A DNA stretch of 63,446 bases, filler included, from Octopus bimaculoides (Eukaryota), in assembly GCF_001194135.2 (NCBI RefSeq). It is 4 parts of 4 records of this genome, joined end to end, with 100 filler letters (N's around TTAATTAATTAA, not from the genome) between each part and the next. Parts side by side here need not be neighbours in the genome. Positions count along the whole stretch, not along the records: positions 53,373 to 59,646 come from NW_026312452.1; 3 more parts are not named here. One strand, written 5' to 3'. How positions within the stretch are numbered: position 1 is the first letter of the stretch; each line of letters opens with the position of its first letter. Made by a program: the position numbers and the translations under genes. The notes under the pieces were generated by a model, which saw only the letters and a program-made list of their open reading frames with translations, did not search any database and was not told the origin of the DNA. Below, piece by piece: positions 3,701-59,462 of this stretch.

Positions 3701-4979
3701 ATACTGTATCGTCAGAACTTGTAAAGCCAAAAGTTTGTATCGATTTTTAGGTTTTTAATAGATTACTGTTAATGTACATAGAATGCATTAGCAAAGATAA
3801 TTTCATTCGCAAGTGTAGTGAAAGTGTAATGAAGTTGTTGAAATAGAAATAGTTCGCTATTGTTTCTGAGAAATAGTTTACAACTTTCTATTCGTTGCGT
3901 TAGTGTAGGTTAGTGGCATAATATTTCGTTTGTTATATTCTTGCTGTTGTTGTAGCCACCAGTGGGTCCTGAATGAGAATATCTATTTTCAGATGTATTC
4001 AATACACAACCATCACATCTTATTGTATATTAGACCTTCCTTTTTTAATTGGTCATAGTGTGATTTATAAAGATTTAGTTGATTTTTATATCACGAGGCT
4101 ATCTCTATGAGTAGATTATGTCTACTGTGTGTCACTAGATAAAATGATTTAGCTCTTTTCGAAAATGTTATGACAGAATGTTTGAATCACTTTATTGGTC
4201 ATATTAACTTATTTTGAACGGATACACAATAACTATATTTAGAAGATAGGAAGGGCATATTTGGCGTAATGATAAGTAAAATAGCTTCAACTGAAAAATC
4301 AATAGCAACTTCTTTTGTCAGTCACTCTTGCCACAGCACACCAAAATAATATTGATATTATGATTCACAACGAGCTCTATTGGTTAGGCATCAGATAAAC
4401 ACTGCAGAATCGCAATGTTTCGTATCCTGTTACATGCACATCGACCAATCGATGACGGCTGCACTTAACTCCGATCTCAGTTAATGTAGCCACAGGTAGA
4501 TAACATGTACGTAGTAGGAACTCTATGTAATTAGCAATGTTTAGCTAGCATCCTTTTGGGTGTCACACTATCTTTGTTGCATATAGTTCTATTATTATAT
4601 AACTCATGTGGATCAATACGAATGAATACTGTATTTTATTAGAATTGTACTGATGCCGTTCCACCAAACTCAACAGGTATACAAAATTATTCTTGTAAGC
4701 ATTTACATCGTAGAAGATCCGTACCAACAATTTAATATAATTTATTTTAAATTTCAAATTATTCCATTAGCTGTCTTTTATTTTCTTTTAATTGTTTCAC
4801 TCTTCGGACTCGGACCAGACTGAGGCACTACTTTAACGTCTAGTACTTAGTGTATTGATAGTTTTTACCGAATCGGTAGGTTACAGGGACGTAAACAAAC
4901 CAACACCATTTGTCAGGCGTAGAACAGATAGAAGTACAATGACATACACGCACAGAAATATGCACACGCATAAACACAA

Positions 4980-5021
<42 letters not shown>

Positions 5022-7384
5022 ACACACGCACACACAAACACACACACACATACACGATGATCTTAAACACATTTTCCGTCCTACCATGTTTCACACACAT
5101 ACATAAATAATTGCACACACACTCACACTTACACACACACATACACACACGTGTACAAGCGTATAAGTCTAATGTGAGTGGTGATTGGGAAAGATGAATT
5201 TCTAATATGTTACAATCGTGTTACTCTATTTAGACTGGTCTAGTATTGTTGTATGGAGTCCGATTTGATAACTTGAATCACCTTATAGTGAAAATCTTAG
5301 TGCTTATAGTTTGAATCATTGTTACTGTCTACTGCGTCTTGGTACAAAATAAGTAGAATTCTGTTCTGTATCAGTGTTCAACTTGTACCCGAATGCCTAG
5401 CTAATATTAAGAACAGACTCTTCTATTTAAGCTTCGTTGAGGGTAGACATAACATGTTCCTTCAGGTCACCTTATACGTGTAGAGTATTTTTAAATTACT
5501 TTTTATATAAAGATTCGTGGCACGTATTTCGCAACAAATTTTACGGATGCCAATTACAAAAGTGCAGGCCTTACCTAAAGCCAGATGAATGGATGTATAT
5601 CAGCAATTATTGAAATGACACAAACGACTCCATCAATATCTCTAAGCCTTATATAGCTTACTTTATTGTTCTTATTTATATAGGTTTTGTTGTGTTATTA
5701 TGAAGCTTCAAATATCCACAAATATGCGCTTACAGTCAATACAGTACAAAATATATGCATATTTGAATAGACGCCTTATTCTTTCATAATTATGTAGCGG
5801 TTAGAGCTAGCTATAAACTTTTCTGTATCACATTAATAACTATTCTTCAGAAACTATGAACTGATAAAGATACCATTTCATATTTGATCCATGCAGATTC
5901 AGTGAATTTTCAATTCATTTGTCAAGTAATTCAGTTTACATAATCGGATTTGGTAACAGTTTGATTATCCTCATTTGATTACTTGAAGGCAGATTAAGAA
6001 CAAGGCCAGTTCCCGTTCAATTAGTTGAGTTTAAAGTAAATGATTCCGTAAAAAAAGTAAGAATAACAATAATTAGCACCCAGAAATTTAGATCAGAAAT
6101 CATAATGAATTCCTTTGAAAATGTACCGAGCAAATATCTCCAATTCTTATCTATTCAGAATCAACAAGAAATATCATTTTTCATAGTAATGACAAAATAT
6201 TTCTAACAATCTGATAACGAAGGACAAATTTTAACATATTTAAAATAACATCATCACCAAAACTAATTCGTATTTCAGGAATAGAAAGCATACGGATATC
6301 ACAGCTATAATTCACGTGAATATATTATATATGCAGAAAGAGAATAAATTTATAAGTGTTCTGAAAGTAAGTAAATTCGATAAATTTAGACAACCTTTAG
6401 CTTTTTATACTACTGTGAGTGTAGTCTTTTGTGAAACCGTTTCCTTGCCTAACAGAAGCATGGACATATTTTCTTGTTTAGTATTGTCTTGACAGAATAG
6501 CAGCTGTTGATGTTCTTCTTCATTTTCAATATCTCAGAAACTTTGAAAACCTGACGTATTACTTTTAATAGAAATTTTGACAAAGATTCTCCATAAATTT
6601 TTGTCATTTTATGCGATATTTGTGCAAATTTATGTGCTTCTGATTTTAACGATAATTCTGTAGGACTCAGCGTTATATTCATCAGAATTGAAGATTACTA
6701 AAAATTGTGAAGGTTCGTGCATAATATAGCTTCTCATTTCAGTTTTTGGTTGTAACTTCTTTTATTTATAGTTATTTTATTGTATTTATTCATTATCTGA
6801 TTTTAATGTCTGTGTTTTCGGCTCCGCTACAATCTCCTCTCGCATTATACTTTTATTGCATCACTAATTAACTCATTCCTTTGTCGTGCTAGTGCTGTAG
6901 CGAAAACTTTGAATATCGAGCTGAAATAATGAATTGTCTTTTGGTTGCAGCGATAATTTTAATTTTACACAAATTCGCCTGTTGGATTTGTAAGATAAGA
7001 TGAGGCACGATGTTTGGTGTTGCACTTTTTTTTAAATGTATCATTTTATTGATTTTTGTTGTAGCACGTTTCAGCTTGCTTCGCTTTTCATTTATAAATA
7101 CAGAGAATATTTTCTCGTGCAAATCACAGCTATAACTAAAACCAGAACACAATATATATTCGATACTTAATATTGAACGCTAAGTCAAGTTTATGGCCTT
7201 CCGGTAAATGACAGAAAGTAAATTGCCCAATCACATTTATAAATTTTAATTACAAATATTTTTTTAAAAATGTATATATAATTAAAAGCTTAAATTATTC
7301 AATCGCTAATTTATGTTTTTCTTTTCATATTTTATGTATGAGTGCAATACATGGTAGTTTGATCCATATTGTTCACCACATTAT

Positions 7385-18600: not shown

Positions 18601-21544
18601 TCCACATTGTTATTGGATTTTGGTTCATTGACAACAAAGATACGAGAAGAAAAATCTTTATGAAACACCAAAGTAAACACACCTTAGGCGACAACACTTA
18701 TATATGTTCTTTTTCATTTGCTTTATTTCTTTTCTGTCTCGCATCCCACTCTATCGGAAAGTCAATAGCGAGAACCATTAGATTGTTCAAGCTTGCAGCA
18801 TAGACGTATTAAACTCCACAAACTTACTAGTAAATGCACTAAAGATTTTCAAGTCGGTGCTCCTATAACGAGCAGCCTATCGCTGTGTCTCTAGTTACTG
18901 GAAATATGACGGGAGGTCTGCCATGACGCCTTCAAAGCGTGATTACGAAAACGGATCAATGAAGAAATATCTAATCTGAACTGATCTTATAATATAAAAG
19001 GCTGATCACAGAATACCAAAACTGGTAAGACATATCAAATACTCCTTGATCATATTTACTGGAATGTGCCAAGGAAAACGAATTTGTAAATGTTATAATG
19101 TTTATGCTTAAAGTACTAAAACATAAATTATAAACGGTGTGATACAAAATGTATGTCATTATTCCATATTATATCCATTTAAGTCATTCCTATCAATTCA
19201 CCTAATTACAATTTTGTTTCTATATCATAAACAATGCTTATGATCATTCATAAATTCAATAATAATCAGTAATAAGTTAGACCGCACATAACTGCAAAAA
19301 TATCCAGGTAGATAGCAAGCTCTAGTGTAAAATATTCGGTACATCGCCCACTGTAGCAATACTCACTACACTCTGTGTAAATACTTAAGTAGCATTTTAT
19401 AATATATCTACAAAGGCAGACGACTTCGAGTAATGGAAGCTATTAAAACATGACGACTTAACCTTCCTCAATACTTGCATTAAAGGTGCGCTTAAAAGGG
19501 TTTCAGTTGAAATACAAACAAAAGAATTTCCGGATGGTAAAGATGAATAGCACGTCATGGCGCTCGTCCACAAAACTAGAAATAATTGCTTTTGTCTAGA
19601 TAAAATAGACGTTTTATTTTGGAAGGGAGAATATACAGGTAATACTATTTACATGCAATAAATACTTTCTTCTCTTTAAATAGCGATTTCTTTTGCCTAG
19701 GCATTATGACTTTTTCATGGATAAAAATTGCTAAAAATGTCTCTAGCATAAGACAATTTATTGATCGATGATCACTATATATTATTTTATTATCTAGAAT
19801 CTAAATTTTCTAAAATAATTTGCTTGTCTAGCAGCAACTGACAGTTTTGTCAGATGATAACATACAAACAAGTCCCGTTTGTCAGCATTCATTGATTGTA
19901 TCTCAGGTATCTACTCTTTTGGATGAACGAGTTTATCAGAAATCTGTTATTCAGAAACAGTTAGCTGCATACAACTACGTAACCTCGTTGGAACGGTTTC
20001 TCCTTACGTCATCTGATAATAACATAATTCATATCAGAGTTTAAACTACCGTCAGCATATTTTGAACGCTATATTGTGATACGTATAATACAGTACTGGT
20101 AAGGTTAACAAAAATTACATCCATTCGTCGTTCATGCTTAGCAGCTACTTTATTTAGGTTACCGTGTATTGACGAGCAGACATAGCCTCTCTCTCTCTCT
20201 CGGTCACGTTACCATTCACTCAGTGGCAGAGAGAGAGAAAGGCTGTTGCAGCAGTATTCGGCCGATAAATAGTACATTGAAACAGCATAAACAAGCACTG
20301 ACTTCGACACCCGGGCCAGGCATTGAATCCACAAACTTATGATTAGACAATGAATACCCTTACCACTTGGCCACGTGATTTCGCACTGGGGATTTACATG
20401 GCATAAATATCTAGTGTTCGGTAATCCAGTAATCCAATAATTTGCAATAACAATAAAGCAACATTTTAATTACAGTTGATATTTCAATTACAGATAATGA
20501 TATAACATTGGGAGAAGCTTCAATAGAAACTTTTGACGTACACTGGAAGCCAATATATGCATAACAACTAATTATTTTTCCGTTGGAATTAACTATATTC
20601 GGTGCTACCGGCTATCAACTCATACATCAATGTTAACGTGCTACCGCTACTTATAACGATAAGTTGATTCAACTCTGTCGTACATGCTTAAATTTATTCA
20701 TACTTGGCTGCTCAGAGATGAGAGTCATTGACAACCCCGACGACATCTTAAATGGCCGTAAAGGTAACAACTTTAAAAATGATCTATCACAGCCTTTCAT
20801 TTCTAAATTTTCTTGGCCTTGTTAATCTTATTATTTCCTTTAGTCACAATAAACTAATTATGAAAATATTGAGAGACTTTCTATTCTCCTCTAAGTTATA
20901 TAGTTACGAAACCACCAAAAGGTACTCAGTAACATTAAAATTAAAAGGCTTTCAATGATTTGTACAACTGGTGTCTAATACCCCCTTGTAAAGCATAACG
21001 AAGAAAGAAGTTGTTGTGTGAAACATTACATAAAAAAACGATTCCACATTAAATCGCTCATTAAAATTACACAGTGCAGTGACTACTACTACGGCGGGCG
21101 ATGGACGGAACATATTAAACTAGAGTTTGCATGCGGTCTAACTTATTCCTGATTATTATTGAATTTATTTATGATAATTACCATTTTTTAAGATATAGAA
21201 ACAAAACATCTAATTACGGCTTTGGTATTCATTGTTACTGTGAAAATGCTGCTAACTTTGACCAACAAGCAATTAGTTTCGAATTTGTTTTACCTATATA
21301 TGGATCCAGTTTCTCTGGCGGTTATATTCTTCCCTGGACGGGATGGCGGTCCGTCACATGATTACGCACTTTTACAAGTTGCATGGACTGGGGAGAAGTG
21401 AAATGAAGTGTTTAGCTAAAGAACACAACGCGTCGGTCGGTCAACAAATTGAAACTACAATCTTACGATTATAGATTCAACGCAATGACCACTAAGACAT
21501 GCGCCACTGAATATTAATACAATAATATAACATTGGTTTCTAAT

Positions 21545-21750
21545 TTTTGCACAAGACCAGTAATTTTGATGGAGATGCTGAGTCAATTAGATCGAGCCCC
21601 GTGCTCAACTGTTACTCAGTTTCCCAACCCCGAGAATATGAAAGGCAAAGTTGACACGGGTGGCATTTGACCCGAGAATGTAAAGATGGATGAAACGCCG
21701 TCAAGCAGTGTACCTGGCATGCTAGCGATTCAGCCGGCTTGCCGCCTTAA
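21545..21750 (-). mobile_element. SINE family B fragment
   Basis: Reverse complement of the family B core. Confidence 0.6.
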
Positions 21751-22904
21751 TTTATTAATATAATATTATGAATTCAATTATTTTAATAATTATATTCATG
21801 AAATATATATTACTTGTGTACTTGTAGAGTTGAAAAGAAAGTAATTAAGGAAATCAATGTAATACTATATATTCCGATTTTTAAAATGTTATACTCACAC
21901 CAACACATGCAAAGACAGACACACATACGCACATAACTATATGCATACATGTAAATGCTCACAAACAACATTGCCACAAACACCAAACTTACCTTGCAGA
22001 AAACTACAAAAAGGATGATTCACAAAACACTACCAAACTGCATATAAACACTGAAAAACACATACTAACGTCACCATACACATATATGTGGATATACAAT
22101 GTAACATATTTTCAGAAGCCCTCTCAATGCTCAATGTCGTTCATTGGTTTTATTATTTCTTTTCGTTCCGTGTTCATTCGCTTTATGTAATAACAACATT
22201 AATAACAGTGGTAAAAATAACAATATTAGACTGCATGACGAAGAGAATTGAAGGAAACAACGCGGTTGTAGTGAGGTTAAAAGCTAATATCTTAGCAGTA
22301 AATTTAATAATCTATATATAGATTCAGTACAGGTTAGTAGAATTTCAAACTTGCTCATACCGTGTGCTTCTGAATTATATCAACAGATTTTAGCTTCTCT
22401 GCTCAGCTTTTCAACTTTTTTGTGTTCCATGTATGTGTTTTTACAATAGATAGACTGCACCAGGGAATTATGGAAATACAGATCAAACTGAATGCCGATG
22501 TCAGTTTACATAACAATGACACTTTTTTTGCTAACAAATTCGCAAAATTATTGAATAAGTCAGCTGTTGCTTTGATGTATTTCACATGCAATATTTTCTG
22601 CTAAAAAGACAGAAAGATATAAATCTCACGTCAAGTATATATTGGAAGAAGTCTCAATCTAAGAAGAAAAAAAACGCCTCCGGTAGCAGTAAATTTCTCT
22701 CGAATGATTTAGAATATTTAATGCTTTAAAAATCATAAACAAATATGCCTTGTGAAAAACATGTGATGTATATGCAAATAAAGAAATATGAATATGCGGC
22801 ATTCATTCTTTGTCTGACTGATTTAGTGTGAAAGTATCTTTCTGTCGTTCTCTTTACTTTTCATTGTTACTGGATCTGAAGGAAATGGCAATACACATTA
22901 CCTT

Positions 22905-23230
22905 AACAAAATCTCCAAATTTGAGACTGACGTAATTAGTGTTTCGTTTAAACTGTTGCAAGTGGATATATGGAAGAGAATATGAATACGATAAAGTTCC
23001 AAGGGATTGCGATCTGGGAAGTAAGGACTGCACGTGGATGACGCTTTGGTGTGAAATGTCAGAAAGTATCATTTACGTAAGAGGGATTGTTCCATTGGGG
23101 ATGAATGTAAGCATATCGTTGATTCATAGGAGGAAGAGTATAGGTAGCAGTATCCTAAAACCGAAGCGTGGCAATATGTACCGGAGAGAGATTCAATGGT
23201 ATGCATTGTGATAATGTTACAGGAAGCAAT
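22905..23230 (-). mobile_element. Decayed CR1/L2-like LINE 3' end
   Basis: SLLPRSQSLGTL..HLQQFKRNTN resembles the CR1-group terminal motif SF.PR...LWN.LP...NLQ.FKR.VN. Confidence 0.45.
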
Positions 23231-23241
23231 CAAGTCAAGTG

Positions 23242-23303
<62 letters not shown>

Positions 23304-24515
23304 NNNNNNNNNNNNNNNNNNNNNNNNNNNNNNNNNNNNNNNNNNNNNNNNNNNNNNNNNNNNNNNNNNNNNNNNNNNNNNNNNNNNNNNNNNNNNNNNN
23401 NNNNNNNNNNNNNNNNNNNNNNNNNNNNNNNNNNNNNNNNNNNNNNNNNNNNNNNNNNNNNNNNNNNNNNNNNNNNNNNNNNNNNNNNNNNNNNNNNNNN
23501 NNNNNNNNNNNNNNNNNNNNNNNNNNNNNNNNNNNNNNNNNNNNNNNNNNNNNNNNNNNNNNNNNNNNNNNNNNNNNNNNNNNNNNNNNNNNNNNNNNNN
23601 NNNNNNNNNNNNNNNNNNNNNNNNNNNNNNNNNNNNNNNNNNNNNNNNNNNNNNNNNNNNNNNNNNNNNNNNNNNNNNNNNNNNNNNNNNNNNNNNNNNN
23701 NNNNNNNNNNNNNNNNNNNNNNNNNNNNNNNNNNNNNNNNNNNNNNNNNNNNNNNNNNNNNNNNNNNNNNNNNNNNNNNNNNNNNNNNNNNNNNNNNNNN
23801 NNNNNNNNNNNNNNNNNNNNNNNNNNNNNNNNNNNNNNNNNNNNNNNNNNNNNNNNNNNNNNNNNNNNNNNNNNNNNNNNNNNNNNNNNNNNNNNNNNNN
23901 NNNNNNNNNNNNNNNNNNNNNNNNNNNNNNNNNNNNNNNNNNNNNNNNNNNNNNNNNNNNNNNNNNNNNNNNNNNNNNNNNNNNNNNNNNNNNNNNNNNN
24001 NNNNNNNNNNNNNNNNNNNNNNNNNNNNNNNNNNNNNNNNNNNNNNNNNNNNNNNNNNNNNNNNNNNNNNNNNNNNNNNNNNNNNNNNNNNNNNNNNNNN
24101 NNNNNNNNNNNNNNNNNNNNNNNNNNNNNNNNNNNNNNNNNNNNNNNNNNNNNNNNNNNNNNNNNNNNNNNNNNNNNNNNNNNNNNNNNNNNNNNNNNNA
24201 TATATATATATGAACCAAAAAAAAAAAAACAAACGAAGACTGTATGTATGTATAAATCTATTAATCTATTTTCGTTTGAGCATTTATTTGAATGTAAGAA
24301 ACATACAAACGTATATATATGCAAGCCAATATATGTGCAAAATCACAAAAGTATGTCTACTAACGTTGAAAGAGATTAATCTTACCCTATTCCAGTAACG
24401 ATGAATTCTAAAAAAAAACTATAATAAAAAACAGACGACTAAGAACATAATACTGAAACAGTCTGACGCATCTCGTATTTGTATACTCATGCAGCTGGGT
24501 GCGCATGCACACAGA

Positions 24516-25722
24516 CGAGGTGGTATTAAAATGTTTCCGGAGTGGTTATGTGTAATAAAAAAATAGCTTATAGACCGCCGTCTCCTTCGAAATAGTTCCT
24601 TTGCGCCACAATACACCGGTCCCAGTGTTCCGGCCACTTTTGTAATCCGGCCCGAGAAGACATTATCCATAAGCAAGTCGAGGATCTTCCGCGATTCGCT
24701 CTGGTTCTCAATAATGGTGTCAAAACGGTAACCTTCCAGCAGCATATTTATCTTGGGGAAGAGACGGAAGACCCCAGGTGCTAAATCTGGCGAGTAGGGC
24801 AGGTGCAGAAGCGATACCATGTTGTTTGGGCGAGATACTTGAGAGTGAGGAGAGCTCGGTAACAGGGTACATTGTGGTCGTCGGGAATCCAGTTCTTCGC
24901 GCTCCACGGAACCGGTCGCTTTTACCGAATGTCTTCTGTCAAACTCTTCAAAATGTCGCAGTAGAACTATCGATTGACGGTCCGGGCCTGGGGGACGAAT
25001 ACTTGATGCACAATACCACATGCTCTTGATTGAGTTGCATTTCTGTCGTGTTTTCTTTGACCGAGGAGATGAAGGCCTCTTACATTGTGGTGACTGCTGC
25101 TTCATCTCAGGATCGTACCCATAGATCGAAACCCCGTCACCGGTGATAATCTTTGACATGTAGGATGGGACATCAGCGGACTCTGATGGAAATCTTGACA
25201 GACTTCGACGCGATATTCTTTCTGCTCAGTGGTCAGCATGCGTGGACAAACATGGCAGAGAAACGCGGCATGTTCAATTCAGACATTAGGATTGTCTACA
25301 CGGATCCATGCGACAGTCCAGCAGCATCATTAATGTTGTTGATTGTCCTCCAACAATCTAATGTTCAAGCTAATAAACTTTCTCTATATTTCCGAGAATA
25401 ACGTTCGATACAGATCTTACCAGAACACTCATCGCCTCGTCACCGTGAGCTTCTCGATGCGTGATCGATGTTTCTGTAGCAGACATCCCAAGTTTAACAC
25501 AAAATTACTTCACGTTACTTCTTTGTTTCAACTTCCTGCTCATGACAAAATCGCAGGCTACAGCTTCCACGTGATCACAAAAACACAAATTTCACAATTT
25601 GCGAAGTAAACACAGCGATGTCACTCATCAAGGCCACTGCTAACTCTCACTGAGCACGCAGTGTTGTGCTGCCATCTGTTGGCGCGCTACACAACTAGCC
25701 CCAGTTTTATTTTGAACGTCCT
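24516..25722 (-). mobile_element. Mariner (DD34D) fossil, near full length
   Basis: KIITGDGVSIYGYDPEMKQQS, HLPYSPDLAP, and an N-terminal (E)QRSNVK..VKLGMSATET; frameshifted, with degraded TIRs. Confidence 0.85.
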
Positions 25723-25765
25723 TTTCTCAGCACACTAATTGACATATATCCATTAGTCCCCAAAA

Positions 25766-25808
<43 letters not shown>

Positions 25809-27340
25809 CATGTGAACACAACTTTATGCATAAATAAACGATACTAGACTATTCCACTCTGCTTATGCTTGGAACTCTCGTAGAGTACATGGAAATATAT
25901 ACACAGGTCTCTTTCTCTTTCTGTCTCTCTCTGTCTCTCTCTCCTTCTCACTCACTCACTCTCTCTTTCTTCTCTCACTCTGTGTGTGTGTCTCCTGAGT
26001 GATTAGTTTAGGAGCTAAATGCCATGCTTGAACATCTAGTATCTTGTATACAGCCGTTGTACCTATTATGTTTTGCCTGGTATTTCATAGACAATCAACA
26101 AAATAAAAGAGTCGTGATTATTCCACGTGGTTCTCCCATTATTATATGATATCAGTTATAACTCCTTCAGTGGTGTAGGGATATCAAATTAGATACATAG
26201 TCTTTGTTTAACTTTACGAGCATAGACTAATGTGAAATCGTTGCTATTGTTTTAGGTCCAGCGTTGAAGTGGTAGGATGTCTAATACTGGATTATCCTAA
26301 TTAATGTTGGATTTATACATTCCCATTACATTTTTATGTTATGGAACCATAATACAATTGTATTCTGTAAATATGTTTGTCTTCTCTTGTGTGTGTGTCG
26401 GTGGGTGTTTTTGCATCAACGTTCTGAGTAAGATTTAGAAACAAAGATAGATGGACAGATAGAAGATAGCCTTTTGCATTTCACAAAAGGACAGCCGTAA
26501 ATAATGAAGATAGTGAATTCTGCTTTAAAACGCAAAACGCTACCTGAGAGCCAAGATGTAGAATCATTCGACTGGACTTAATGAACGTTCCAAAAATTTG
26601 CCAAATTTCGAAATATGCACAAAATCTAAACCACTTTAGAGGAGAAAATACATGTTTCGCTTGATGAAATACATTCTTTACAACGTAGATACTAAATACA
26701 TAGCCGTTATCCAATAATATTTCTAACATTTTATAAATAATTTAGCATCAAGCCCTTCGCCACCAAATCAAGATACCAAGGAAATTGCTAATACCTTAGA
26801 GTGCATCGCCTCAGAGAACCTCGCAATTACGTTTAATGACTATAAATTCTCTATCTTTAGCAACCGTAAATATACGTTGAATAAAGTAGCAAAACGTAAA
26901 TTAGGAACAGTTAACAAGCAAATTCTCGAGATGGTAATTCTTAGAATAAACAATACAGTACCACTTGCATGATGAAATATCAGTATAGAACTTTTAGTAT
27001 GATTATGTGTGATGTCTACAACCAACATCTTTGGATATTCAATCAATATACATTCCTGATTTTCAACATTCTATCATTATGACCCTCACTTTTCGAAAGC
27101 TCGTCGTCCGAAAATACAACCACGTGAATGAACGAAAGGAACATTAAGCATGCAAGAAAATCTCTTTTGTTTTTGATAGTTCAACGGAGGCAAAATGAGA
27201 AAGATGCGAATTATCCGATACCTCTAAAGATATCCAAAATGTGCAAAATAATAAGAATTTATAATCCAAACCTTTTCCAAAAAATTATAAAAATTTTTTT
27301 TTTTTTTAATAATTTCACATATAATTTTATTTTATATTAT

Positions 27341-28000
27341 CTAAATCTATGAACAATATTTGGAATACAGGACAATATAATGGATTTTATACATAATTAT
27401 TATGGAATTACTACAGAAGACTTACCAAGGAGGCATATATGAATTTAAAGATTCTCATACTAAAGTGTACTTACCAAAATCAAAAGCAGTAATTTTTAAT
27501 TTATATTTCAAACAAACACCATTTTCCCATGTTACTTCATAATTGGCCGCAGCTCTAAGCTGAAACTTAAAAAAAAAAAAAAAAAAAAAAAAATTCGTAA
27601 AATTGTACAAATTTCACATTTGAAATTTTTGTGGAACAGAAGAGTTATCTATAAATGCTTATCAATATAGGATTCCATTATTCTATATTATCTAAGTCTA
27701 TAAATTATATTTGGAATACAAGAAACTATAATGGATTTTACACATAACTGGATTATTACAGGAGACTTACCAAGGAAGCATATATAGATTTAAAGACTCT
27801 CATACTAAAGTGTACTTACCAAAATCAGAAGCAGTAATTTTTGAATTTTAATTTATATTTCAAACAAACACTATTTTCCCATATTACTTCATATTTAAAA
27901 AAAAATTACCATTCGATAAATTATACAAATTTCACATTTTATATCTTTGAAGAGCAAGAAGATTTGTCTATAAATGCTTATCAATATAGAATTTCCATTA
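27341..28000. repeat. Local tandem duplication (~350-bp unit) including the candidate exon
   Basis: 27341-27690 and 27691-28000 align (e.g. gacttaccaagga.gcatatat..ctaaagtgtacttaccaaaatc). Confidence 0.85.
27475..27559 (-). CDS. Candidate 85-nt coding exon, cadherin-repeat-like (LRAAANYEVTWENGVCLKYKLKITAFDFG)
   Basis: Long poly-T tract and TTTCAG acceptor, GTAAGT donor, open phase-0 frame. The peptide fits the cadherin pattern L...(D/N)YE....Y.L.I.A.D.G. Confidence 0.5.
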
Positions 28001-28288
28001 TAGGGACAGCACTTCTGCGAAACGATCGTAAGGCGCTTTGTAAATTCAATTCGAAACTTTTAAACTGTCATATTTATTATCATATATTTATACTTATACA
28101 TATTAACATTTATTTCTGCATATTAATATTTCTAATACAACAATTATTTTACACACGTATATATTTCTCTGAAGAATTTTCTAATATTGATTTCCTGATA
28201 TTTATAATAATATATTATATAATATATTATATATATATATATATNNNNNNNNNNNNNNNNNNNNNNNNNNNNNNNNNNNNNNNNNNNN

Positions 28289-28300
28289 TTAATTAATTAA
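28289..28300. other. Probable artificial scaffold-join pad (TTAATTAATTAA between N runs); also 53317-53328 and 59691-59702
   Basis: An identical six-frame-stop 12-mer sits inside N runs three times. Confidence 0.85.
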
Positions 28301-28344
28301 NNNNNNNNNNNNNNNNNNNNNNNNNNNNNNNNNNNNNNNNNNNN

Positions 28345-28678
28345 GGCTATAGCCAACACTGCCAGATATTTTGAGCATCTCTGCAGTGATTCCTGATGGG
28401 CCGGGGCTTTCCCGGTCTTCATACTCTTAATTGCTTTATGTACCCTGTTACTATCAACTTGGATAGCTGGTCCCTCTATTGGGTCGACATACGGCAGGCT
28501 CTCTTCCTCCCATTCATTCTCTTTATTAAGCAATCTATCGTAGTGGCATCTCCAGACCTCTTTCTTTGCATCCTCATTTAGTGCAAGCGTACCATCATCC
28601 ATGCGAACACATTTCTCTCCTACAACATCACTATTCTCTCTCCTACACTGTCTTGCAACACGAAATACCTCGATAATC
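28345..28678 (-). mobile_element. RTE-type LINE internal fragment (upstream of RT core)
   Basis: DVVGEKCVRMDDG..KKEVWRCHYDRLLNKENEW..VHKAIKSMKTGKAP. Confidence 0.8.
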
Positions 28679-29012
28679 ATCGTCATCATCATTTAACATC
28701 TGTTGTCCATGCTGGCATGGGTTGGATGGTTTGACTGGGTTGGCATGCTGGAAAGCTGTACCAGCCTCCAGTCTGACTTGGCATGGTTTTCTATGGCTAG
28801 ATTCCCTTCTTAATGCCAACCACTCCAAGAGTGTAATGGATGCTTCTACATGCCACCAGCACGGGTGCCATTTGCGTGAACTGGTATCTGCCACAAATGT
28901 GATTTTGCTCAACTTGATAGGTTTTCTTCTCAAGCACAACATAATGCCAAAGGTTTCAGTCATTGCCTCTGCAAGGCCCAACACTTGAAAGGAACTCAGT
29001 CACTTTGCCTCC
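28679..29012 (-). mobile_element. LINE 3' end with (GAT)n tail
   Basis: Same terminal module as 29750-29925 (ttacactcttggagtggttgg...aaaccatccaacccatgccagcatgg...ttaaatgatgatg). Confidence 0.7.
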
Positions 29013-53848: not shown

Positions 53849-54010
53849 GGCACAGGAGTGACTGTGTGGTAAGTAGCTTGCTTACCAACCACATGGTTCT
53901 GGGTTCAGTCCCACTGCGTGGCACCTTGGGCAAGTGTCTTCTACTATAGCCTCGGGCTGACCAAAGCCTTGTGAGTGGATTTGGTAGACGGAAACTGAAA
54001 GAAGCCCGTC

Positions 54011-54062
<52 letters not shown>

Positions 54063-54268
54063 ATGTGTGTGTCTTTGTACCCCCACCATCACTTGACAAC
54101 CGTTGCTGGTGTGTTTACGTCCCCGTAACCTAGCGGTTCGGCAAAAAGAGACCGATAGAATAAGTACTAGGCTTACAAAGAATAAGTCCTGGGGTCGATT
54201 TGCTCGACTAAAGGCAGTGCTCCAGCATGGCTGCATTCAAATGACTGAAACAAGTAAAGAGAGTAAAG
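53849..54268 (+). mobile_element. tRNA-derived SINE (family A), full length with an internal (TA)n
   Basis: The head has A-box-like TGACTGTGTGGT and B-box-like GGTTCAGTCCC. The body is shared with 43603-44010, 36649-37003 and 7385-7812. Confidence 0.85.
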
Positions 54269-54690: not shown

Positions 54691-56138
54691 TTTACCATAG
54701 AATGCCTTATATAAACTTTTGTTTATTCCATGTTCAGACCATATCTTTCCCGACAGATTGGCCTCCTAATTATGACAGACTTGTACAATTTTTCACAAAA
54801 AGCTTCATAAAGGATTTTTTTTCCTTTTTAAACTATTTACATGACTGTTTGACTGTTTTACATGACTATATTCATTAAAATTTATTAAAACTTCAGAAGT
54901 TCTTGCAACTTTGGTCATCGTAATGCTTTGCATCATTTGTTTAATAAAAATTCCACCTCCTAATGATTTTGATTTTATTTTATAATAGACAGTTATCATA
55001 CAGAAAATACTAGCTTCCAAATTCTGTTTTCTGATTAGGTAAAATTGATTAAACTTTGAACCTCAGTAACATTTTTCTGAAATTTTATCTATGTGTATAT
55101 GTAAATATGTATATATATATATATATATATAGGTGAGAAAGTTGGTATGTGAAAGCACGTGGTTGGATGTATAAAAGATAATAAGAGTGAAAAAACTACA
55201 GAAGGCTTGTGTTACATGGTTAAAGTATATATTTAGATTATGTCAGAAAAATGTTAGAAAAATGTTAGAAAAATGTTATAAAATCTTTTTGGTATATAAA
55301 CATTGTATTTTGAGAAATNNNNNNNNNNNNNNNNNNNNNNNNNNNNNNNNNNNNNNNNNNNNNNNNNNNNNNNNNNNNNNNNNNNNNNNNNNNNNNNNNN
55401 NNNNNNNNNNNNNNNNNNNNNNNNNNNNNNNNNNNNNNNNNNNNNNNNNNNNNNNNNNNNNNNNNNNNNNNNNNNNNNNNNNNNNNNNNNNNNNNNNNNN
55501 NNNNNNNNNNNNNNNNNNNNNNNNNNNNNNNNNNNNNNNNNNNNNNNNNNNNNNNNNNNNNNNNNNNNNNNNNNNNNNNNNNNNNNNNNNNNNNNNNNNN
55601 NNNNNNNNNNNNNNNNNNNNNNNNNNNNNNNNNNNNNNNNNNNNNNNNNNNNNNNNNNNNNNNNNNNNNNNNNNNNNNNNNNNNNNNNNNNNNNNNNNNN
55701 NNNNNNNNNNNNNNNNNNNNNNNNNNNNNNNNNNNNNNNNNNNNNNNNNNNNNNNNNNNNNNNNNNNNNNNNNNNNNNNNNNNNNNNNNNNNNNNNNNNN
55801 NNNNNNNNNNNNNNNNNNNNNNNNNNNNNNNNNNNNNNNNNNNNNNNNNNNNNNNNNNNNNNNNNNNNNNNNNNNNNNNNNNNNNNNNNNNNNNNNNNNN
55901 NNNNNNNNNNNNNNNNNNNNNNNNNNNNNNNNNNNNNNNNNNNNNNNNNNNNNNNNNNNNNNNNNNNNNNNNNNNNNNNNNNNNNNNNNNNNNNNNNNNN
56001 NNNNNNNNNNNNNNNNNNNNNNNNNNNNNNNNNNNNNNNNNNNNNNNNNNNNNNNNNNNNNNNNNNNNNNNNNNNNNNNNNNNNNNNNNNNNNNNNNNNN
56101 NNNNNNNNNNNNNNNNNNNNNNNNNNNNNNNNNNNNNN

Positions 56139-56470
56139 ACCTCATCTACAGGTTCCCTCAACTGCTAGGGTGTGGCACTTTTTCACACAGCTATCCTCAT
56201 CCATTCTTGCCACATGACCATACCAGCACAACCGTCTCTCTTGCACACCACAACTGATGCTTCTTATGTTCAACTTTTCTCTCAACGTACTTACACTCTG
56301 TCTAGTATGCACACTGACATTACACATCCATCGGAGCATACTGGCTTCATTCCTTGTGAGCCTACGCATGTCTTCAGCAGTCATGGCCCATGTTTCACTG
56401 CCATGTAGCATGGCTGTTCGTACACATGCGTCATACAGTATGCCTTTTACTCTGAGAGAGAGAGACCCAT
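56139..56470 (-). mobile_element. RTE-type LINE ORF 3' fragment
   Basis: LRVKGILYDACVRTAMLHGSETWAMTAEDMRRL..WYGHVARMDEDSCVKKC. Confidence 0.85.
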
Positions 56471-56763
56471 TGTTGCCAGCAGAGGTAAGAGCTTGTGTGA
56501 GTGTGTGTGTATGTATATGTATGTATGTGTATATGTATGTGTGTATATATATGTATGTGTATATGTGTAGATATATATGTATGTGTATATATATATTAAT
56601 GGTTATCACCAAGCCAACATGGCAGTCCAAAAAATAGGACGAATGCTGCCGCTGATTAGCTCCAAGCGGTCATAGCCTCTAGCTAGCTATGTGACACACG
56701 AACCTGTATCCATTATAACCTTCGAACAGGGTAGGTCAGCAGCTTTCCCTTGCTGGTTTGGCA

Positions 56764-56805
56764 TCTGCAGACTAGTTTCGGGGTATTGCCCCTTGTCAAT
56801 GCAGA
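56764..56805 (-). ncRNA. Type I hammerhead ribozyme, copy 1 (U3-A8 core variant)
   Basis: Minus strand reads UCUGCA-UUGACAA-GGGG-CAAUA-CCCC-GAAA-CUAG-UC^UGCAGA: 6-bp stem I, core, 4-bp stem II, palindromic stem III, GUC triplet. Predicted cleavage between 56770 and 56769. Confidence 0.85.
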
Positions 56806-57123
56806 GCAGCCGAACCCAGCAGGCATCGCTACTGACCGTCTGTATGAAGGATTATTTACCTAAATTCAGTGGAATACATCCACTGGTTTTTAAAAATAGA
56901 AATATTGATATTTCTAATTCTCTCTAAAGGAGACTACGGCAACAGTACTGGATATTAATAGTTATCACCAAGCCCAGCATGGCAGTTCAAAACATAGGAC
57001 GAATGCTGCCGTTGATTAGCTCCAAGAGGCCATCGCCTCTAGCTAGCTATGTGACACACAAATCTGTGTCCATTAAAATCTTCAAATAGGATTGGTCAGC
57101 CACTTCCCCTTGCTGGTCTGGCA

Positions 57124-57165
57124 TCTACAGACTAGTTTCGAGGTATTGCCTCTTATCAATGTAGA
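57124..57165 (-). ncRNA. Type I hammerhead ribozyme, copy 2 (U3-A8 core variant)
   Basis: Minus strand reads UCUACA-UUGAUAA-GAGG-CAAUA-CCUC-GAAA-CUAG-UC^UGUAGA. Same fold as copy 1 with compensatory pairs. Predicted cleavage between 57130 and 57129. Confidence 0.85.
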
Positions 57166-57861
57166 GCAGCCAAACCCTGCAGTTGTTGCTACTGACCGTC
57201 TGTACGAAGGATTATTTACCTAAATTCAGTGGAATACATCCACTGGTTTTCAAAAATAGAAATATTAATATTTCTAAGTCTCTCTAAAGGACACAGATTC
57301 ATGTGTCACATAGCTAGNNNNNNNNNNNNNNNNNNNNNNNNNNNNNNNNNNNNNNNNNNNNNNNNNNNNNNNNNNNNNNNNNNNNNNNNNNNNNNNNNNN
57401 NNNNNNNNNNNNNNNNNNNNNNNNNNNNNNNNNNNNNNNNNNNNNNNNNNNNNNNNNNNNNNNNNNNNNNNNNNNNNNNNNNNNNNNNNNNNNNNNNNNN
57501 NNNNNNNNNNNNNNNNNNNNNNNNNNNNNNNNNNNNNNNNNNNNNNNNNNNNNNNNNNNNNNNNNNNNNNNNNNNNNNNNNNNNNATATATATATATATA
57601 TAAAATTTATTAATAAGGGTAGAAATTGATATTAATCAATTAAAACCAGTGGTCTAGCATATTAAAAAAAATCTGAAGATTAAAATTATATTACATACAA
57701 AAATAGGAGGAATGACCAGCAAAATTGGTCTCCTATATGCTAGAAATAGATGCCGAATCATCTTACCATGAAAAATATTTTCTCAGTAAAAATTTAGCAA
57801 CACAGCAGACTGTAAGAGGGCAAGACAAATGAAAAAATACTAAATAAAAAAAACGATTAAC

Positions 57862-57926
57862 CTACATACCATGGTTTCACCAGTTAAAATTTACATAAGT
57901 AAATATCTGCAGGATCATCAGTGTAG
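57862..57926 (-). ncRNA. Type I hammerhead-like motif in left inverted-repeat arm
   Basis: CUACA-CUGAUGA-[long stem II]-GAAA-CCAUGG-UA^UGUAG: perfect 5-bp stem I and palindromic stem III, but U.U at the base of stem II. Confidence 0.55.
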
Positions 57927-58380
57927 TATGTCGATTTATAAAGTATAATTTCCAGAACTAGACACAAGACGTCCATCCGAAAGGGAGCACGTGTAGAGTT
58001 CTACAAATTACATTCAGTGTATCCTTTCAAACGTCTTCAATCTGGCGCGCTAAGTCCGGAAATAACTCTGCAGTTAATAAATTTTTGTAGCTAATTTACC
58101 TGTTTGAGAACATTGTTATTTAAAATTTATTAATAAGGGTAGAAATTGATATTAATCAATTAAAACCAGTGGTCTAGTATATTAAAAAAATCCGAAGGTT
58201 AAAATTATATTACATACAAAAATGATTTATTAACTGCAGAGTTATTTCCGGACTTAGCGCGCCAGATTGAAGACATTTGAAAGGATACACTGAATGTAAT
58301 TTGTAGAACTCTACACGTGCTCCCTTTCGGATGGACGTCTTGTGTCTAGTTCCGGAAATTATATTTTATAAATTGACAGA

Positions 58381-58445
58381 CTACACTGATGATCCTGCAG
58401 AAATTTACTTCTGTAAATTTTAACAGGTGAAACCATGGTACGTAG
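58381..58445 (+). ncRNA. Type I hammerhead-like motif in right inverted-repeat arm
   Basis: CUACA-CUGAUGA-UCCUG..AAAUUUAC-UUCU-GUAAAUUU..CAGGU-GAAA-CCAUGG-UA^CGUAG. One mismatch in stem I next to the core. Confidence 0.5.
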
Positions 58446-58616
58446 GTTAATCGTTTTTTTTATTTAGTATTTTTTCATTTGTCTTGCCCTCGTACAGTCT
58501 GTTGTGTCGCTAAATTTTTACTGAGAAAATATTTTTCGTGGTTAGATGATTCGGCATCTATTTCTAGCATATAGGAGTCCACTTTTGCTGGTCATTCCTC
58601 TTATTTNNNNNNNNNN

Positions 58617-58659
<43 letters not shown>

Positions 58660-58691
58660 TTGTGTGTGTGTGTGTGTATAAATGTATGTAT

Positions 58692-58988
58692 GAAGGCGAG
58701 GTTGTGAGTTCGATTCCTGTACCAGGCTGTGTGTTGTGTTCTTGAGCAAGACCCTTTATTTCACGTTGCTTCAGCTAACTCAGCTGTAGAAATAAGTTGC
58801 GACATCACAGGTGCCAAGCTGTATTGGACTTTGCCTTTCCTCTGGATAACATCAGTGGTTTGGAGAGGGGAGGCTAGTATGCATGGGCAACTGCTGGCCT
58901 TTCACAAACAACCTTGCTTGGACTTGTACCTCAGAGGGTAACTTTCTAGGTGCAATCCCATGGTCATTCATGACCGAAAGGGGTCTTC
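58692..58988 (+). mobile_element. tRNA-derived SINE (family C) with a CORE-like block
   Basis: B-box-like GAGTTCGATTCC followed by tgtgttcttgagcaagaccctttatttcac. Confidence 0.6.
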
Positions 58989-58999
58989 TTGTGTATGTA

Positions 59000-59139
59000 T
59001 AAATATATATATCATCATCATCATCATCATCTATATATATATATATATATATATAATCTGTGTGTGTGTGCGTCTGTGTATATATATATATATATATACA
59101 AATATATATGTAAATCTCTCTCTCTCTCTCTCTCTCTAT

Positions 59140-59185
<46 letters not shown>

Positions 59186-59356
59186 ATATGTATGTATGTA
59201 TATTTATGTATATGTATATATATATGTATATATATGTATGTATATATATATGTATTTATATATATGTATATATATGTGTGTGTGTGTGTATAAATATGTA
59301 TATTTATATGTCTGTGTATATATATATGTATACATATATCTCTGTATATATATATG

Positions 59357-59402
<46 letters not shown>
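59000..59402. repeat. Compound (TA)/(TG)/(TC) microsatellite
   Basis: Read directly. Confidence 0.95.
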
Positions 59403-59405
<3 letters not shown>

Positions 59406-59462
59406 TAGATATCGGTGGCAATTTTTTTCTTCCTCCGTTTTTCCCTTCTTTGGACTTTCTTT

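What the first reader, a model, noticed from the sequence alone, without database searches (positions are those of the whole stretch)
56595..57317. Retrozyme-like tandem array: 360-nt units each carrying a self-cleaving hammerhead
Seen: two ~360-bp tandem units (about 89% identical by hand count), each with a complete type I hammerhead on the minus strand. The predicted cleavage sites (56770/56769 and 57130/57129) are exactly 360 nt apart, and the unit has no coding capacity. Established: tandem 150-400 bp repeats with type I hammerheads (newt satellite 2, Schistosoma Sm-alpha, cave-cricket pDo500, bivalve non-LTR retrozymes) give multimeric transcripts that self-process to monomers and circular RNAs. 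Inference: this is a cephalopod member of that class, producing a 360-nt monomer/circRNA mobilised in trans. I cannot tell whether this family is already catalogued.
Basis: partly seen in the sequence, partly recalled or inferred. Interest (0 to 1): 0.9.

Follow-up and report, generated by a model that had tools for sequence, protein, structure and literature searches.

The report
Hammerhead-ribozyme tandem repeat (retrozyme-like)
This is a two-unit remnant of a very abundant 360-bp repeat family whose RNA carries a self-cutting hammerhead motif with a rare but known paired change in its catalytic core; it fits a known class of animal mobile elements, and no cutting or RNA circles could be shown here.

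Summary
TRF finds a 360-bp tandem repeat at 56593-57291, 1.9 copies, 89% identical. Each unit carries a type I hammerhead-shaped motif on the minus strand, with predicted cleavage after C at 56770 and 57130, exactly 360 nt apart.

One correction: the core is not the canonical CUGANGA. It reads UUGAYAA, so U3 and A8 replace C3 and G8. This covariation is known in nature and reported active in vitro. It likely explains why Rfam reports no hammerhead here, though that was not tested.

A relaxed descriptor finds only these two motifs, none in 300 shuffles and none in 46 Mb of random sequence. All five differences between the two copies inside the motif are compensatory or fall at the free position N7.

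The family is read thousands of times over in genomic reads of one organism. It keeps U3/A8 in four other organism labels checked. About 40% of copies carry a 5-nt duplication that lengthens helix III.

RNA evidence is weak: low depth, both orientations, 8-13 times lower RNA/DNA ratio than neighbouring repeats, and no read ends at the cleavage site.

Verdict: a new member of the known non-LTR retrozyme class. Activity, circular RNA and the cephalopod origin remain untested.

The parts
56596..57291 (-). Tandem array of two ~360-bp units (unit 1 56596-56954, unit 2 56955-57291). The ribozyme-bearing strand is minus.
   Evidence: TRF period 360, 1.9 copies, 89% matches. blastn 89.0% over 337 nt.
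56748..56822 (-). Hammerhead domain of unit 1: GGC-UGC-UCUGCA / UUGACAA / GGGG-CAAUA-CCCC / GAAAC-UA-GUC| / UGCAGA-U-GCC. Helix I is 6 bp plus a distal extension, helix II is 4 bp, helix III is 2 bp.
   Evidence: Sequence read. RNAfold -29.8 kcal/mol, z -2.75. Descriptor hit with helix I 6 bp, helix II 4 bp, loop 2 of 5 nt, helix III 2 bp, loop 3 of 2 nt.
57108..57182 (-). Hammerhead domain of unit 2: UCUACA / UUGAUAA / GAGG-CAAUA-CCUC / GAAAC-UA-GUC| / UGUAGA.
   Evidence: RNAfold -26.8 kcal/mol, z -3.06. Descriptor hit. Relative to unit 1 it has compensatory pairs in helix I and helix II and a change at N7.
56769..56770 (-). Predicted self-cleavage site of unit 1: after C17 (56770), before U1.1 (56769).
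   Evidence: Position of GUC relative to helices I and III. Not shown experimentally. No read-end pile-up in RNA.
57129..57130 (-). Predicted self-cleavage site of unit 2: after C17 (57130).
56770..57129 (-). Predicted 360-nt monomer released by double cleavage. It folds into a strongly self-paired branched structure whose two ends pair through the extended helix I.
   Evidence: MFE -116 kcal/mol, z -4.36, 0 of 100 shuffles as stable. GC 43.3%.
57285..57317 (+). Inverted fragment of the unit (reverse complement of unit positions 56683-56715) that ends the array at the assembly gap.
   Evidence: blastn 87.9% over 33 nt in inverted orientation. Followed by the N run 57318-57585.
56494..56595 (.). 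(TG/TA)n microsatellite abutting the array on the 3' side of the ribozyme strand.
   Evidence: TRF rows 56494-56596.
56142..56490 (-). Neighbour, not part of the element: a 5'-truncated ORF fragment that looks like the C-terminal part of a LINE reverse transcriptase (my reading of the sequence). It belongs to an even more abundant repeat family.
   Evidence: ORF 56142-56630 minus. 130 unnamed homologues, best 85% identity. No Pfam hit. DNA read depth about 21,000-29,000.

Best explanation
The locus is a short, diverged remnant of a non-LTR retrozyme-type repeat family: two units, 11% apart, cut off by an inversion and an assembly gap. Each ~360-nt unit encodes on the minus strand a type I hammerhead with the canonical metazoan layout:
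- helix I of 6 bp, followed by a 3-nt bulge and a distal stem;
- helix II of 4 bp, capped by CAAUA/CAACA;
- a very short helix III with a palindromic sequence (ACUAGU);
- a core in which the C3-G8 pair is replaced by U3-A8.

Proposed mechanism (inferred from the class, not shown here):
1. Read-through or own-promoter transcription of arrays gives multimeric minus-strand RNA.
2. Hammerheads cut after GUC. Short-helix-III copies probably act as dimers through the ACUAGU palindrome. The ~40% of copies with the UAGUC duplication can form a 4-bp helix III, which may allow cleavage as single motifs.
3. The 360-365-nt monomers carry 5'-OH and 2',3'-cyclic phosphate ends and are closed by a tRNA-type ligase.
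4. They are copied back into DNA in trans by a retroelement reverse transcriptase, with Penelope-like elements the favoured candidate.

This particular copy is probably inert.
For: Shown here:
- Tandem 360-bp repeat.
- Hammerhead topology in both units with cleavage sites 360 nt apart.
- Motif absent from 300 shuffles and from 46 Mb of random sequence.
- All five differences between the two units inside the motif are structure-neutral: helix I G-C to A-U (56802/56767), helix II G-C to A-U (56791/56781), and N7 C to U (56795).
- Across thousands of genomic reads of organism C, the only sites varying at 3% or more within 56748-56811 are a distal-stem base, the same helix I pair (5.5% and 6.4%), position 11.1 C to U (G-C to G-U), loop 2, N7 and the helix I bulge. 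No core position varies.
- U3 and A8 are also fixed in organisms A, B, E and F.
- Read depth is about 6,400 over the motif when only 1.9 Gb of a genomic run is sampled, so there are thousands of copies. Tandem-junction reads at a 359-nt step are present.
- The monomer is strongly self-paired, z -4.36. GC is 43%.
- Family RNA is present in raw reads and in transcriptome contigs of four organism labels.

From the literature:
- U3-A8 covaries with C3-G8 in natural hammerheads, and such variants are active in vitro (PMC3088659). The variant also occurs in Schistosoma PLE hammerheads (PMC4209133).
- Class definition and life cycle: PMC7229834.
- PLE link: bioRxiv 10.64898/2026.07.22.740005.
Against: - No Rfam hammerhead model matches, even at E<=10.
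- The family consensus in organisms A, B and C has a G-U pair instead of G-C at 10.1-11.1. Its effect on catalysis is unknown.
- Helix III of 2 bp with a 2-nt loop is not stable on its own.
- The hammerhead region is no more uniform among copies than the adjacent 108 nt (8 of 64 sites against 14 of 108 variable at 3% or more). Constraint is therefore seen only in the pattern of changes, not in their rate.
- The RNA/DNA depth ratio of the unit (about 0.02) is 8-13 times lower than for the neighbouring LINE-like fragment (0.17-0.27) and the right flank (0.25).
- Reads lie in both orientations, and no read ends accumulate at 56770|56769.
- No Penelope-like element or any other reverse transcriptase with a demonstrable link to the unit is in the piece.
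Confidence: 0.65

Rival explanations
1. Ordinary satellite or dispersed repeat that merely carries a dead hammerhead relic. Under this reading the U3/A8 core, the G-U at the base of helix II and the 2-bp helix III make it catalytically inert. The family would then spread by DNA-level mechanisms (unequal crossing-over, segmental duplication) or as a passenger of other elements, without RNA self-processing.
For: - Rfam sees no hammerhead.
- RNA representation is low, in both orientations, and mirrors the genomic subfamily proportions (5-nt insertion 38% in DNA, about 40% in RNA), as expected from passive read-through.
- There are no read ends at the predicted site.
- The hammerhead region is no more conserved than neighbouring sequence.
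Against: - U3 and A8 change together and stay fixed in five organism labels. A decaying core would show scattered single changes.
- All variable sites avoid the core or are compensatory.
- U3-A8 variants are reported active in vitro (PMC3088659).
- Poly(A)/cDNA libraries are expected to under-sample non-polyadenylated, highly structured or circular RNA.
Confidence: 0.22
2. Pseudo-LTR of an autonomous Penelope-like element rather than a free-standing non-autonomous retrozyme. The tandem and inverted arrangement and the microsatellite junction would then be the footprint of a PLE insertion whose ORF is lost in the assembly gaps.
For: - An inverted unit fragment lies 5' of the array, and a (TG/TA)n microsatellite lies at its 3' end.
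- Tandem/inverted insertions and a microsatellite insertion bias are described for PLEs (PMC8557442).
- PLE pLTRs carry type I hammerheads, including U3-A8 variants (PMC4209133).
- N gaps lie on both sides.
Against: - The period is 360 bp with no ORF between the two hammerheads. PLE hammerheads sit about 3 kb apart around an RT-EN ORF (PMC4209133).
- Hundreds of genomic reads join units at a 359-nt step.
- The motif has the canonical layout (helix I 6 bp, helix II 4 bp, palindromic helix III), not the PLE 'min-HHR' layout (helix II 7-8 bp, helix I 4-5 bp, no helix III) (PMC4209133).
- No RT or GIY-YIG ORF is present in the piece.
Confidence: 0.08
3. Chance resemblance: a hammerhead-like string that arose at random in a repeat and was amplified with it.
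For: The two motifs in the window are not independent, because they are copies of one another. Large genomes contain some chance matches to relaxed descriptors (noted in PMC3088659).
Against: - 0 hits in 46 Mb of composition-matched random sequence and 0 in 300 shuffles.
- The motif also has the class-typical extras: 6-bp helix I with bulge, 4-bp helix II, palindromic helix III, tandem ~360-bp context, and a self-paired monomer.
- Compensatory changes are present.
Confidence: 0.03

Closest known systems
Metazoan non-LTR retrozymes (coral, mussel and axolotl repeats with type I hammerheads; Cervera & de la Pena 2020, PMC7229834)
   Same: - Tandem 150-450-bp non-coding units; the mussel family is 350-390 bp.
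- One type I hammerhead per unit.
- GC below 50%.
- Thousands of genomic copies.
- Strongly self-paired monomer.
- Arrays ranging from dimers upward.
   Different: - The core has U3-A8 instead of C3-G8.
- The family is split about 60:40 between a 2-bp and a 4-bp helix III.
- High expression and circular RNA, which are hallmarks of the described families, were not seen in the three cDNA libraries examined.
Newt/salamander satellite 2 and axolotl HHR_Amex1/2
   Same: - ~330-350-bp tandem units.
- Very weak helix III with a palindromic loop, implying cleavage as a dimer of adjacent motifs.
- One axolotl family also has a weakened base pair at the foot of helix II (PMC7229834).
   Different: - Canonical CUGANGA core in amphibians.
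- Different unit sequence. No sequence homology was tested or expected.
Schistosoma Sm-alpha hammerhead
   Same: From my memory of the published Sm-alpha sequence, not tested here: a 6-bp helix I followed by a UAC bulge, and a 4-bp helix II capped by CAAAUA. Here 53% of family copies have a UAC bulge and loop 2 is CAAUA/CAACA.
   Different: - Sm-alpha sits in a SINE-like element and has a canonical core.
- Loop 2 here is one nucleotide shorter.
Penelope-like element pLTR hammerheads (min-HHR), including the U3-A8 variant of Schistosoma Cercyon (PMC4209133)
   Same: - Type I topology.
- Proposed action as dimers.
- Natural U3-A8 covariation.
- Association with tandem/inverted insertions.
   Different: - PLE min-HHRs have a long helix II, a short helix I and no helix III.
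- They flank a ~3-kb RT-EN ORF. Here the layout is canonical and the period is 360 bp with no ORF.

Membership tests
Hammerhead ribozyme, type I | Three helices around a junction, with helix I open and helices II and III closed | tested here: met
   Both units: helix I 6 bp (plus distal stem), helix II 4 bp with a 5-nt loop, helix III 2 bp with a 2-nt loop.
Hammerhead ribozyme, type I | Conserved core C3 U4 G5 A6 N7 G8 A9 ... G12 A13 A14 ... A15.1-U16.1, H17 | tested here: inconclusive
   11 of 13 positions match. C3 and G8 are replaced by U3 and A8 in both units and in the family consensus of five organism labels. The pair is preserved. Natural U3-A8 covariation, active in vitro, is documented (PMC3088659, PMC4209133).
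Hammerhead ribozyme, type I | Match to the curated covariance models (Rfam Hammerhead_1 and relatives) | tested here: not met
   No hammerhead hit at E<=1 on the piece or at E<=10 on 56595-57317 alone.
Hammerhead ribozyme, type I | Mg2+-dependent self-cleavage 3' of H17 | not testable with these tools
   Needs in vitro transcription. RNA reads show no end pile-up at 56770|56769 at depths of about 40-140.
Non-LTR retrozyme | Tandem repeat of about 150-450 bp with at least two consecutive units, each carrying a type I hammerhead | tested here: met
   Period 360, two units, two motifs 360 nt apart. A canonical-core descriptor such as that used in bioRxiv 10.64898/2026.07.22.740005 would presumably miss it because of U3-A8 (not tested).
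Non-LTR retrozyme | Non-coding, low GC, no LTR/PBS/PPT | tested here: met
   GC 43.3%. ORFs of 78 aa or less, not conserved between units and without homologues. No tRNA-like part. No terminal repeats other than the tandem units themselves. PBS and PPT were not searched for specifically.
Non-LTR retrozyme | Many copies in the genome, shared by related species | tested here: met
   Depth about 6,400 over the motif from 1.9 Gb of genomic reads. Thousands of contigs with word depths up to about 10^5 in four other organism labels.
Non-LTR retrozyme | Abundant unit-length linear and circular RNA | tested here: inconclusive
   RNA is present but sparse, in both orientations, with RNA/DNA ratio about 0.02 against 0.17-0.27 for neighbouring repeats. 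Transcriptome contigs hold only fragments. Short reads cannot tell circles from tandem transcripts. The library type may exclude circles.
Non-LTR retrozyme | Highly self-paired monomer RNA | tested here: met
   -116 kcal/mol for 360 nt, z -4.36.
Non-LTR retrozyme | Co-occurrence with autonomous Penelope-like elements, or homology to their pLTR | not testable with these tools
   The source genome is not searchable here. Pattern scans of the metagenome and prokaryote collections found nothing.
Penelope-like element (pLTR with min-HHR) | RT plus GIY-YIG ORF between the repeats; min-HHR layout | tested here: not met
   No such ORF in the piece. The period is 360 bp. The layout is canonical rather than minimal.

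The most novel reading that the evidence does not exclude
A whole, very abundant retrozyme family, probably of octopods, works with a U3-A8 hammerhead core and so escapes Rfam models and canonical-core descriptors. This would imply that published counts of animal hammerheads and retrozymes undercount such families. Within this one family, a 5-nt duplication (UAGUC) would switch helix III between a form that needs a dimer and a form that can fold alone, giving a natural pair of slow and fast self-cleaving alleles.
Probability: 0.3. Interest if true: 0.55.

Novelty: new member of a known kind. Interest (0 to 1): 0.4.

Why it matters
If the family is active, it extends circRNA-forming retrozymes to another animal lineage. 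It would also be a case where the family consensus, and not a stray copy, uses the U3-A8 core.

That bears on method. Surveys that require CUGANGA, or that rely on Rfam models, would presumably miss thousands of copies like these.

The 60:40 split in helix III length gives a ready natural experiment on monomeric versus dimeric cleavage.

If the family is inactive, this is one more hammerhead-bearing satellite relic and of little consequence.

Tried and rejected
- Rfam scans at permissive thresholds found no hammerhead. The only hits were sub-threshold miRNA matches on TA/TG microsatellites, which are artefacts.
- The 78-aa ORF of the unit was used as a handle to pull related contigs from the protein collection. 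Nothing was found.
- The exact-product look-up of the neighbouring ORF was not on record.
- Pattern scans for the hammerhead in metagenome and prokaryote genome collections gave 0 hits, as expected for an animal repeat.
- I tried to name the organism through homologues of the neighbouring ORF. There were 130 hits, all unnamed metagenome proteins. Pfam gave no hit.
- Long-read (Nanopore, PacBio) runs that could show array lengths or unit-length RNA: none could be listed.
- A tRNA-derived SINE origin was rejected: ARAGORN found no tRNA-like part.
- Cofolding two hammerhead domains did not yield the expected helix III dimer. It gave a helix I swap instead. The bare ACUAGU duplex alone is -4.8 kcal/mol. 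I do not rest anything on these folds.
- I tested whether the hammerhead is more conserved among copies than its neighbourhood. It is not.
- Literature searches linking hammerhead or retrozyme with octopus or cephalopod repeats returned nothing relevant. The supplement of PMC7229834 has no cephalopod entry.

Full report
**1. What is in the sequence**

Tandem Repeats Finder reports one long-period array in the piece: 56593-57291, period 360, 1.9 copies, 89% matches, no indels. A direct comparison gives 89.0% identity over 337 aligned bases, with one single-base indel near 56614.

The array is bounded as follows:
- On the left it abuts a (TG/TA)n microsatellite (56494-56595).
- On the right, unit 2 stops at 57291. 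The next 30-odd bases (57285-57317) are an inverted piece of the unit, the reverse complement of 56683-56715 at 87.9% identity.
- A run of 268 N (57318-57585) follows.

The real length of the array is therefore unknown, and the inversion could be genuine or an assembly artefact.

**2. The hammerhead**

Read on the minus strand, the two units are:
- Unit 1: GGC UGC UCUGCA | UUGACAA | GGGG CAAUA CCCC | GAAAC UA GUC^ | UGCAGA U GCC
- Unit 2: GGC UGC UCUACA | UUGAUAA | GAGG CAAUA CCUC | GAAAC UA GUC^ | UGUAGA U GCC

This is the type I topology, with helix I open:
- Helix I has 6 bp, followed by a 3-nt bulge and a distal stem.
- Helix II has 4 bp and a 5-nt loop.
- Helix III has only 2 bp (AC/GU) and a 2-nt loop.
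- The cleavage triplet is GUC.

RNAfold recovers helices I and II in both copies (-29.8 and -26.8 kcal/mol, z -2.75 and -3.06).

The 5' core box is UUGAYAA, not CUGANGA, so position 3 is U and position 8 is A. In the active hammerhead C3 pairs with G8. [quoted passage not shown] Cervera and de la Pena found the same variant in about 1,300 Schistosoma motifs (PMC4209133).

The change is therefore a known, pair-preserving covariation and not damage. Together with the minimal helix III, it probably explains why no Rfam hammerhead model matches, even at E<=10 on the 723 bases alone. I could not test that explanation directly.

**3. Chance**

I wrote a deliberately relaxed descriptor with these requirements:
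- C3-G8 or U3-A8;
- helix I of at least 5 bp;
- helix II of 4-6 bp with a 4-8-nt loop;
- GAAA;
- helix III of 2-6 bp with a 2-7-nt loop;
- H17.

It finds exactly these two sites in the piece. It finds none in 300 dinucleotide-preserving shuffles and none in 46 Mb of random sequence with the piece's dinucleotide statistics. A re-run confirmed that the scanning code recovers the real sites. The two sites are copies of each other, so they count as one event, but that event is far from chance at the scale of this window.

**4. Signs of constraint**

Within the motif the two units differ at five positions:
- 56802 and 56767 turn a helix I G-C pair into A-U.
- 56791 and 56781 turn a helix II G-C pair into A-U.
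- 56795 is N7, the one free core position.

Genomic raw reads of organism C were laid on 56736-56836 at 80% likeness or more. The depth was 5,000-6,000 reads. Within 56748-56811 the only sites with 3% or more alternative bases were:
- 56750, in the distal stem;
- 56758;
- 56767 and 56802, the same helix I pair, at 5.5% and 6.4%;
- 56780, position 11.1 C to U, at 93%, giving G-U at the foot of helix II;
- 56785, in loop 2, CAAUA to CAACA, at 94%;
- 56795, N7, at 5%;
- 56807, in the helix I bulge, UGC to UAC, at 53%.

No invariant core position varies. In contigs of four other organism labels (A, B, E, F), only 56780 and 56785 vary at 5% or more, so U3 and A8 are fixed there too.

There is a caveat. 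The adjacent 108 nt outside the ribozyme are just as uniform, with 14 variable sites. The family is simply homogeneous. The argument for selection therefore rests on where the changes fall, not on how few there are.

**5. Helix III polymorphism**

In organism C, 38% of genomic reads carry AGACT inserted after 56768 (2,455 of 6,421 and 1,987 of 5,187). In RNA reads the share is about 40%.

On the ribozyme strand this reads GAAAC UAGUC UAGUC UGCAGA. That allows a 4-bp helix III (ACUA/UAGU) with a 3-nt loop. The window's copies have the short form, whose ACUAGU is a perfect palindrome. Two neighbouring motifs could then pair into a 6-bp intermolecular helix III (-4.8 kcal/mol for the bare duplex). 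This is the arrangement proposed for newt, axolotl and PLE hammerheads (PMC4209133, PMC7229834). RNAfold gives neither short hairpin a negative energy on its own.

**6. The family**

From 1.93 Gb of sampled genomic reads (about 1-2% of each run), combined depth over 56702-56781 is about 6,460 in X42 and about 5,200 in X43. For any genome in the gigabase range this means thousands of copies. The exact number depends on a genome size I cannot cite.

- Reads joining 56960 to 56602 (a 359-nt step back) show that other loci are tandem too.
- Most copies diverge from the window's beyond 56811 (3,609 loose ends with one consensus).
- A variant lacking 40 nt is common (joint 56811 to 57212).

The window's two units therefore belong to a minority subfamily. 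At positions 11.1 and loop 2 it resembles the consensus of organisms E and F.

The 360-nt monomer between the two cleavage sites folds to -116 kcal/mol (z -4.36). Its two ends pair through the extended helix I. GC is 43.3%.

**7. Expression**

Three paired-end cDNA runs of organism C contain family reads, and transcriptome contigs of organisms A, B, C and D contain fragments. The signal is weak.

| Region | RNA depth, X21 | DNA depth, X42 | RNA/DNA ratio |
|---|---|---|---|
| Unit, 56702-56781 | about 137 | about 6,460 | 0.02 |
| LINE-like fragment, 56142-56461 | about 4,800-5,840 | about 21,400-28,600 | 0.17-0.27 |
| Right flank, 57662-57741 | about 107 | about 426 | 0.25 |

Both runs were sampled to the same number of letters at 80% likeness. 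Other points:
- Both mate orientations are equally represented.
- The subfamily mix mirrors the DNA.
- No molecule ends accumulate at 56770|56769.
- The only nearby flag is 6 molecules beginning at 56772 in one run.

This looks like passive read-through. It does not exclude circles, because such libraries may not capture non-polyadenylated, tightly folded RNA. Short reads also cannot tell a circle from a tandem transcript.

**8. Classification**

The features published for metazoan non-LTR retrozymes are (PMC7229834):
- tandem 150-450-bp units;
- a type I hammerhead in each unit;
- GC below 50%;
- no LTR, PBS, PPT or ORF;
- many copies;
- a self-paired monomer.

All are met except abundant linear and circular RNA, which is unresolved. 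PBS and PPT were not searched for specifically.

[quoted passage not shown] It is met in substance, although a canonical-core descriptor would presumably not fire.

The locus is not a Penelope-like element. The piece has no RT or GIY-YIG ORF, the period is 360 bp, and the motif is not the PLE 'min-HHR' layout. The inverted 5' fragment and the microsatellite junction do recall PLE-type insertions (PMC8557442). That fits the proposal that animal retrozymes are non-autonomous PLE derivatives. This is one locus next to an assembly gap, so I treat it as a hint only.

**9. Taxon and novelty**

The runs' organism names are coded, and the homologues of the neighbouring ORF are unnamed. 'Cephalopod' therefore stays unverified.

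In the searchable literature I found no report of a hammerhead-bearing repeat or retrozyme in cephalopods.

I rate the finding as a new member of a known kind. The mildly unusual points are a U3-A8 consensus core and a length-polymorphic helix III.

Noticed in passing
56142-56490 (minus strand): An ORF fragment (GILYDACVRTAMLHGSETWAM...) that I read as a 5'-truncated LINE-type reverse transcriptase C-terminus. Its repeat family is 4-5 times more abundant than the hammerhead unit in genomic reads and is well represented in RNA. It has no Pfam hit and 130 unnamed homologues, the best at 85% identity. It is interrupted by the N run 55319-56138.
   Followed up: partly
56258-56408: RNA reads of all three runs show a joint that skips 149 nt inside the LINE-like fragment (24, 34 and 71 reads, ends GC..TA). 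It is not among the DNA joints that were displayed. It could be a deletion variant of the family or a processing event.
   Followed up: no
loose ends at 56689, 56771, 56780, 56793, 56803: About 40-110 genomic reads at each of several different positions of the unit run on into the same perfect palindrome, AGGTTCGTCCATCGATCGATGGACGAACCT. This suggests a small palindromic element or fold-back junction repeatedly associated with family copies.
   Followed up: no
56775 (loose ends): 719 genomic reads continue as ACTAGTTTCAGGGTGTTGCCCCTTGTCTAG. On the ribozyme strand this would read CUAGACAAGGGG, so in a roughly 12% subfamily the sequence 5' of A6 differs and U4 may be lost. Agreement is only 0.75.
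   Followed up: no
56811 to 57212 (joint): A common family variant lacks 40 nt (56812-56851 in unit coordinates). It is supported by 332 and 407 genomic reads and is also seen in RNA.
   Followed up: no
57586-58540: The right flank is also repetitive, with genomic read depth 60-950 where a single-copy sequence would give about 1. It has a higher RNA/DNA ratio than the hammerhead unit. Nothing in the piece looks single-copy.
   Followed up: no
54003-54083, 56510-56599, 58628-59415: Sub-threshold Rfam hits to mir-297, mir-1277, mir-3149 and similar families all lie on TA/TG microsatellites. They are low-complexity artefacts.
   Followed up: yes
57285-57317 and N run 57318-57585: The array flips into an inverted unit fragment exactly at a hairpin-forming stretch of the unit (GACACAGAUUUGUGUGUC), just before the assembly gap. 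This is either a real head-to-head junction or a fold-back assembly artefact. Contigs of organism A also show several 'opposite strands' joints within the unit.
   Followed up: partly
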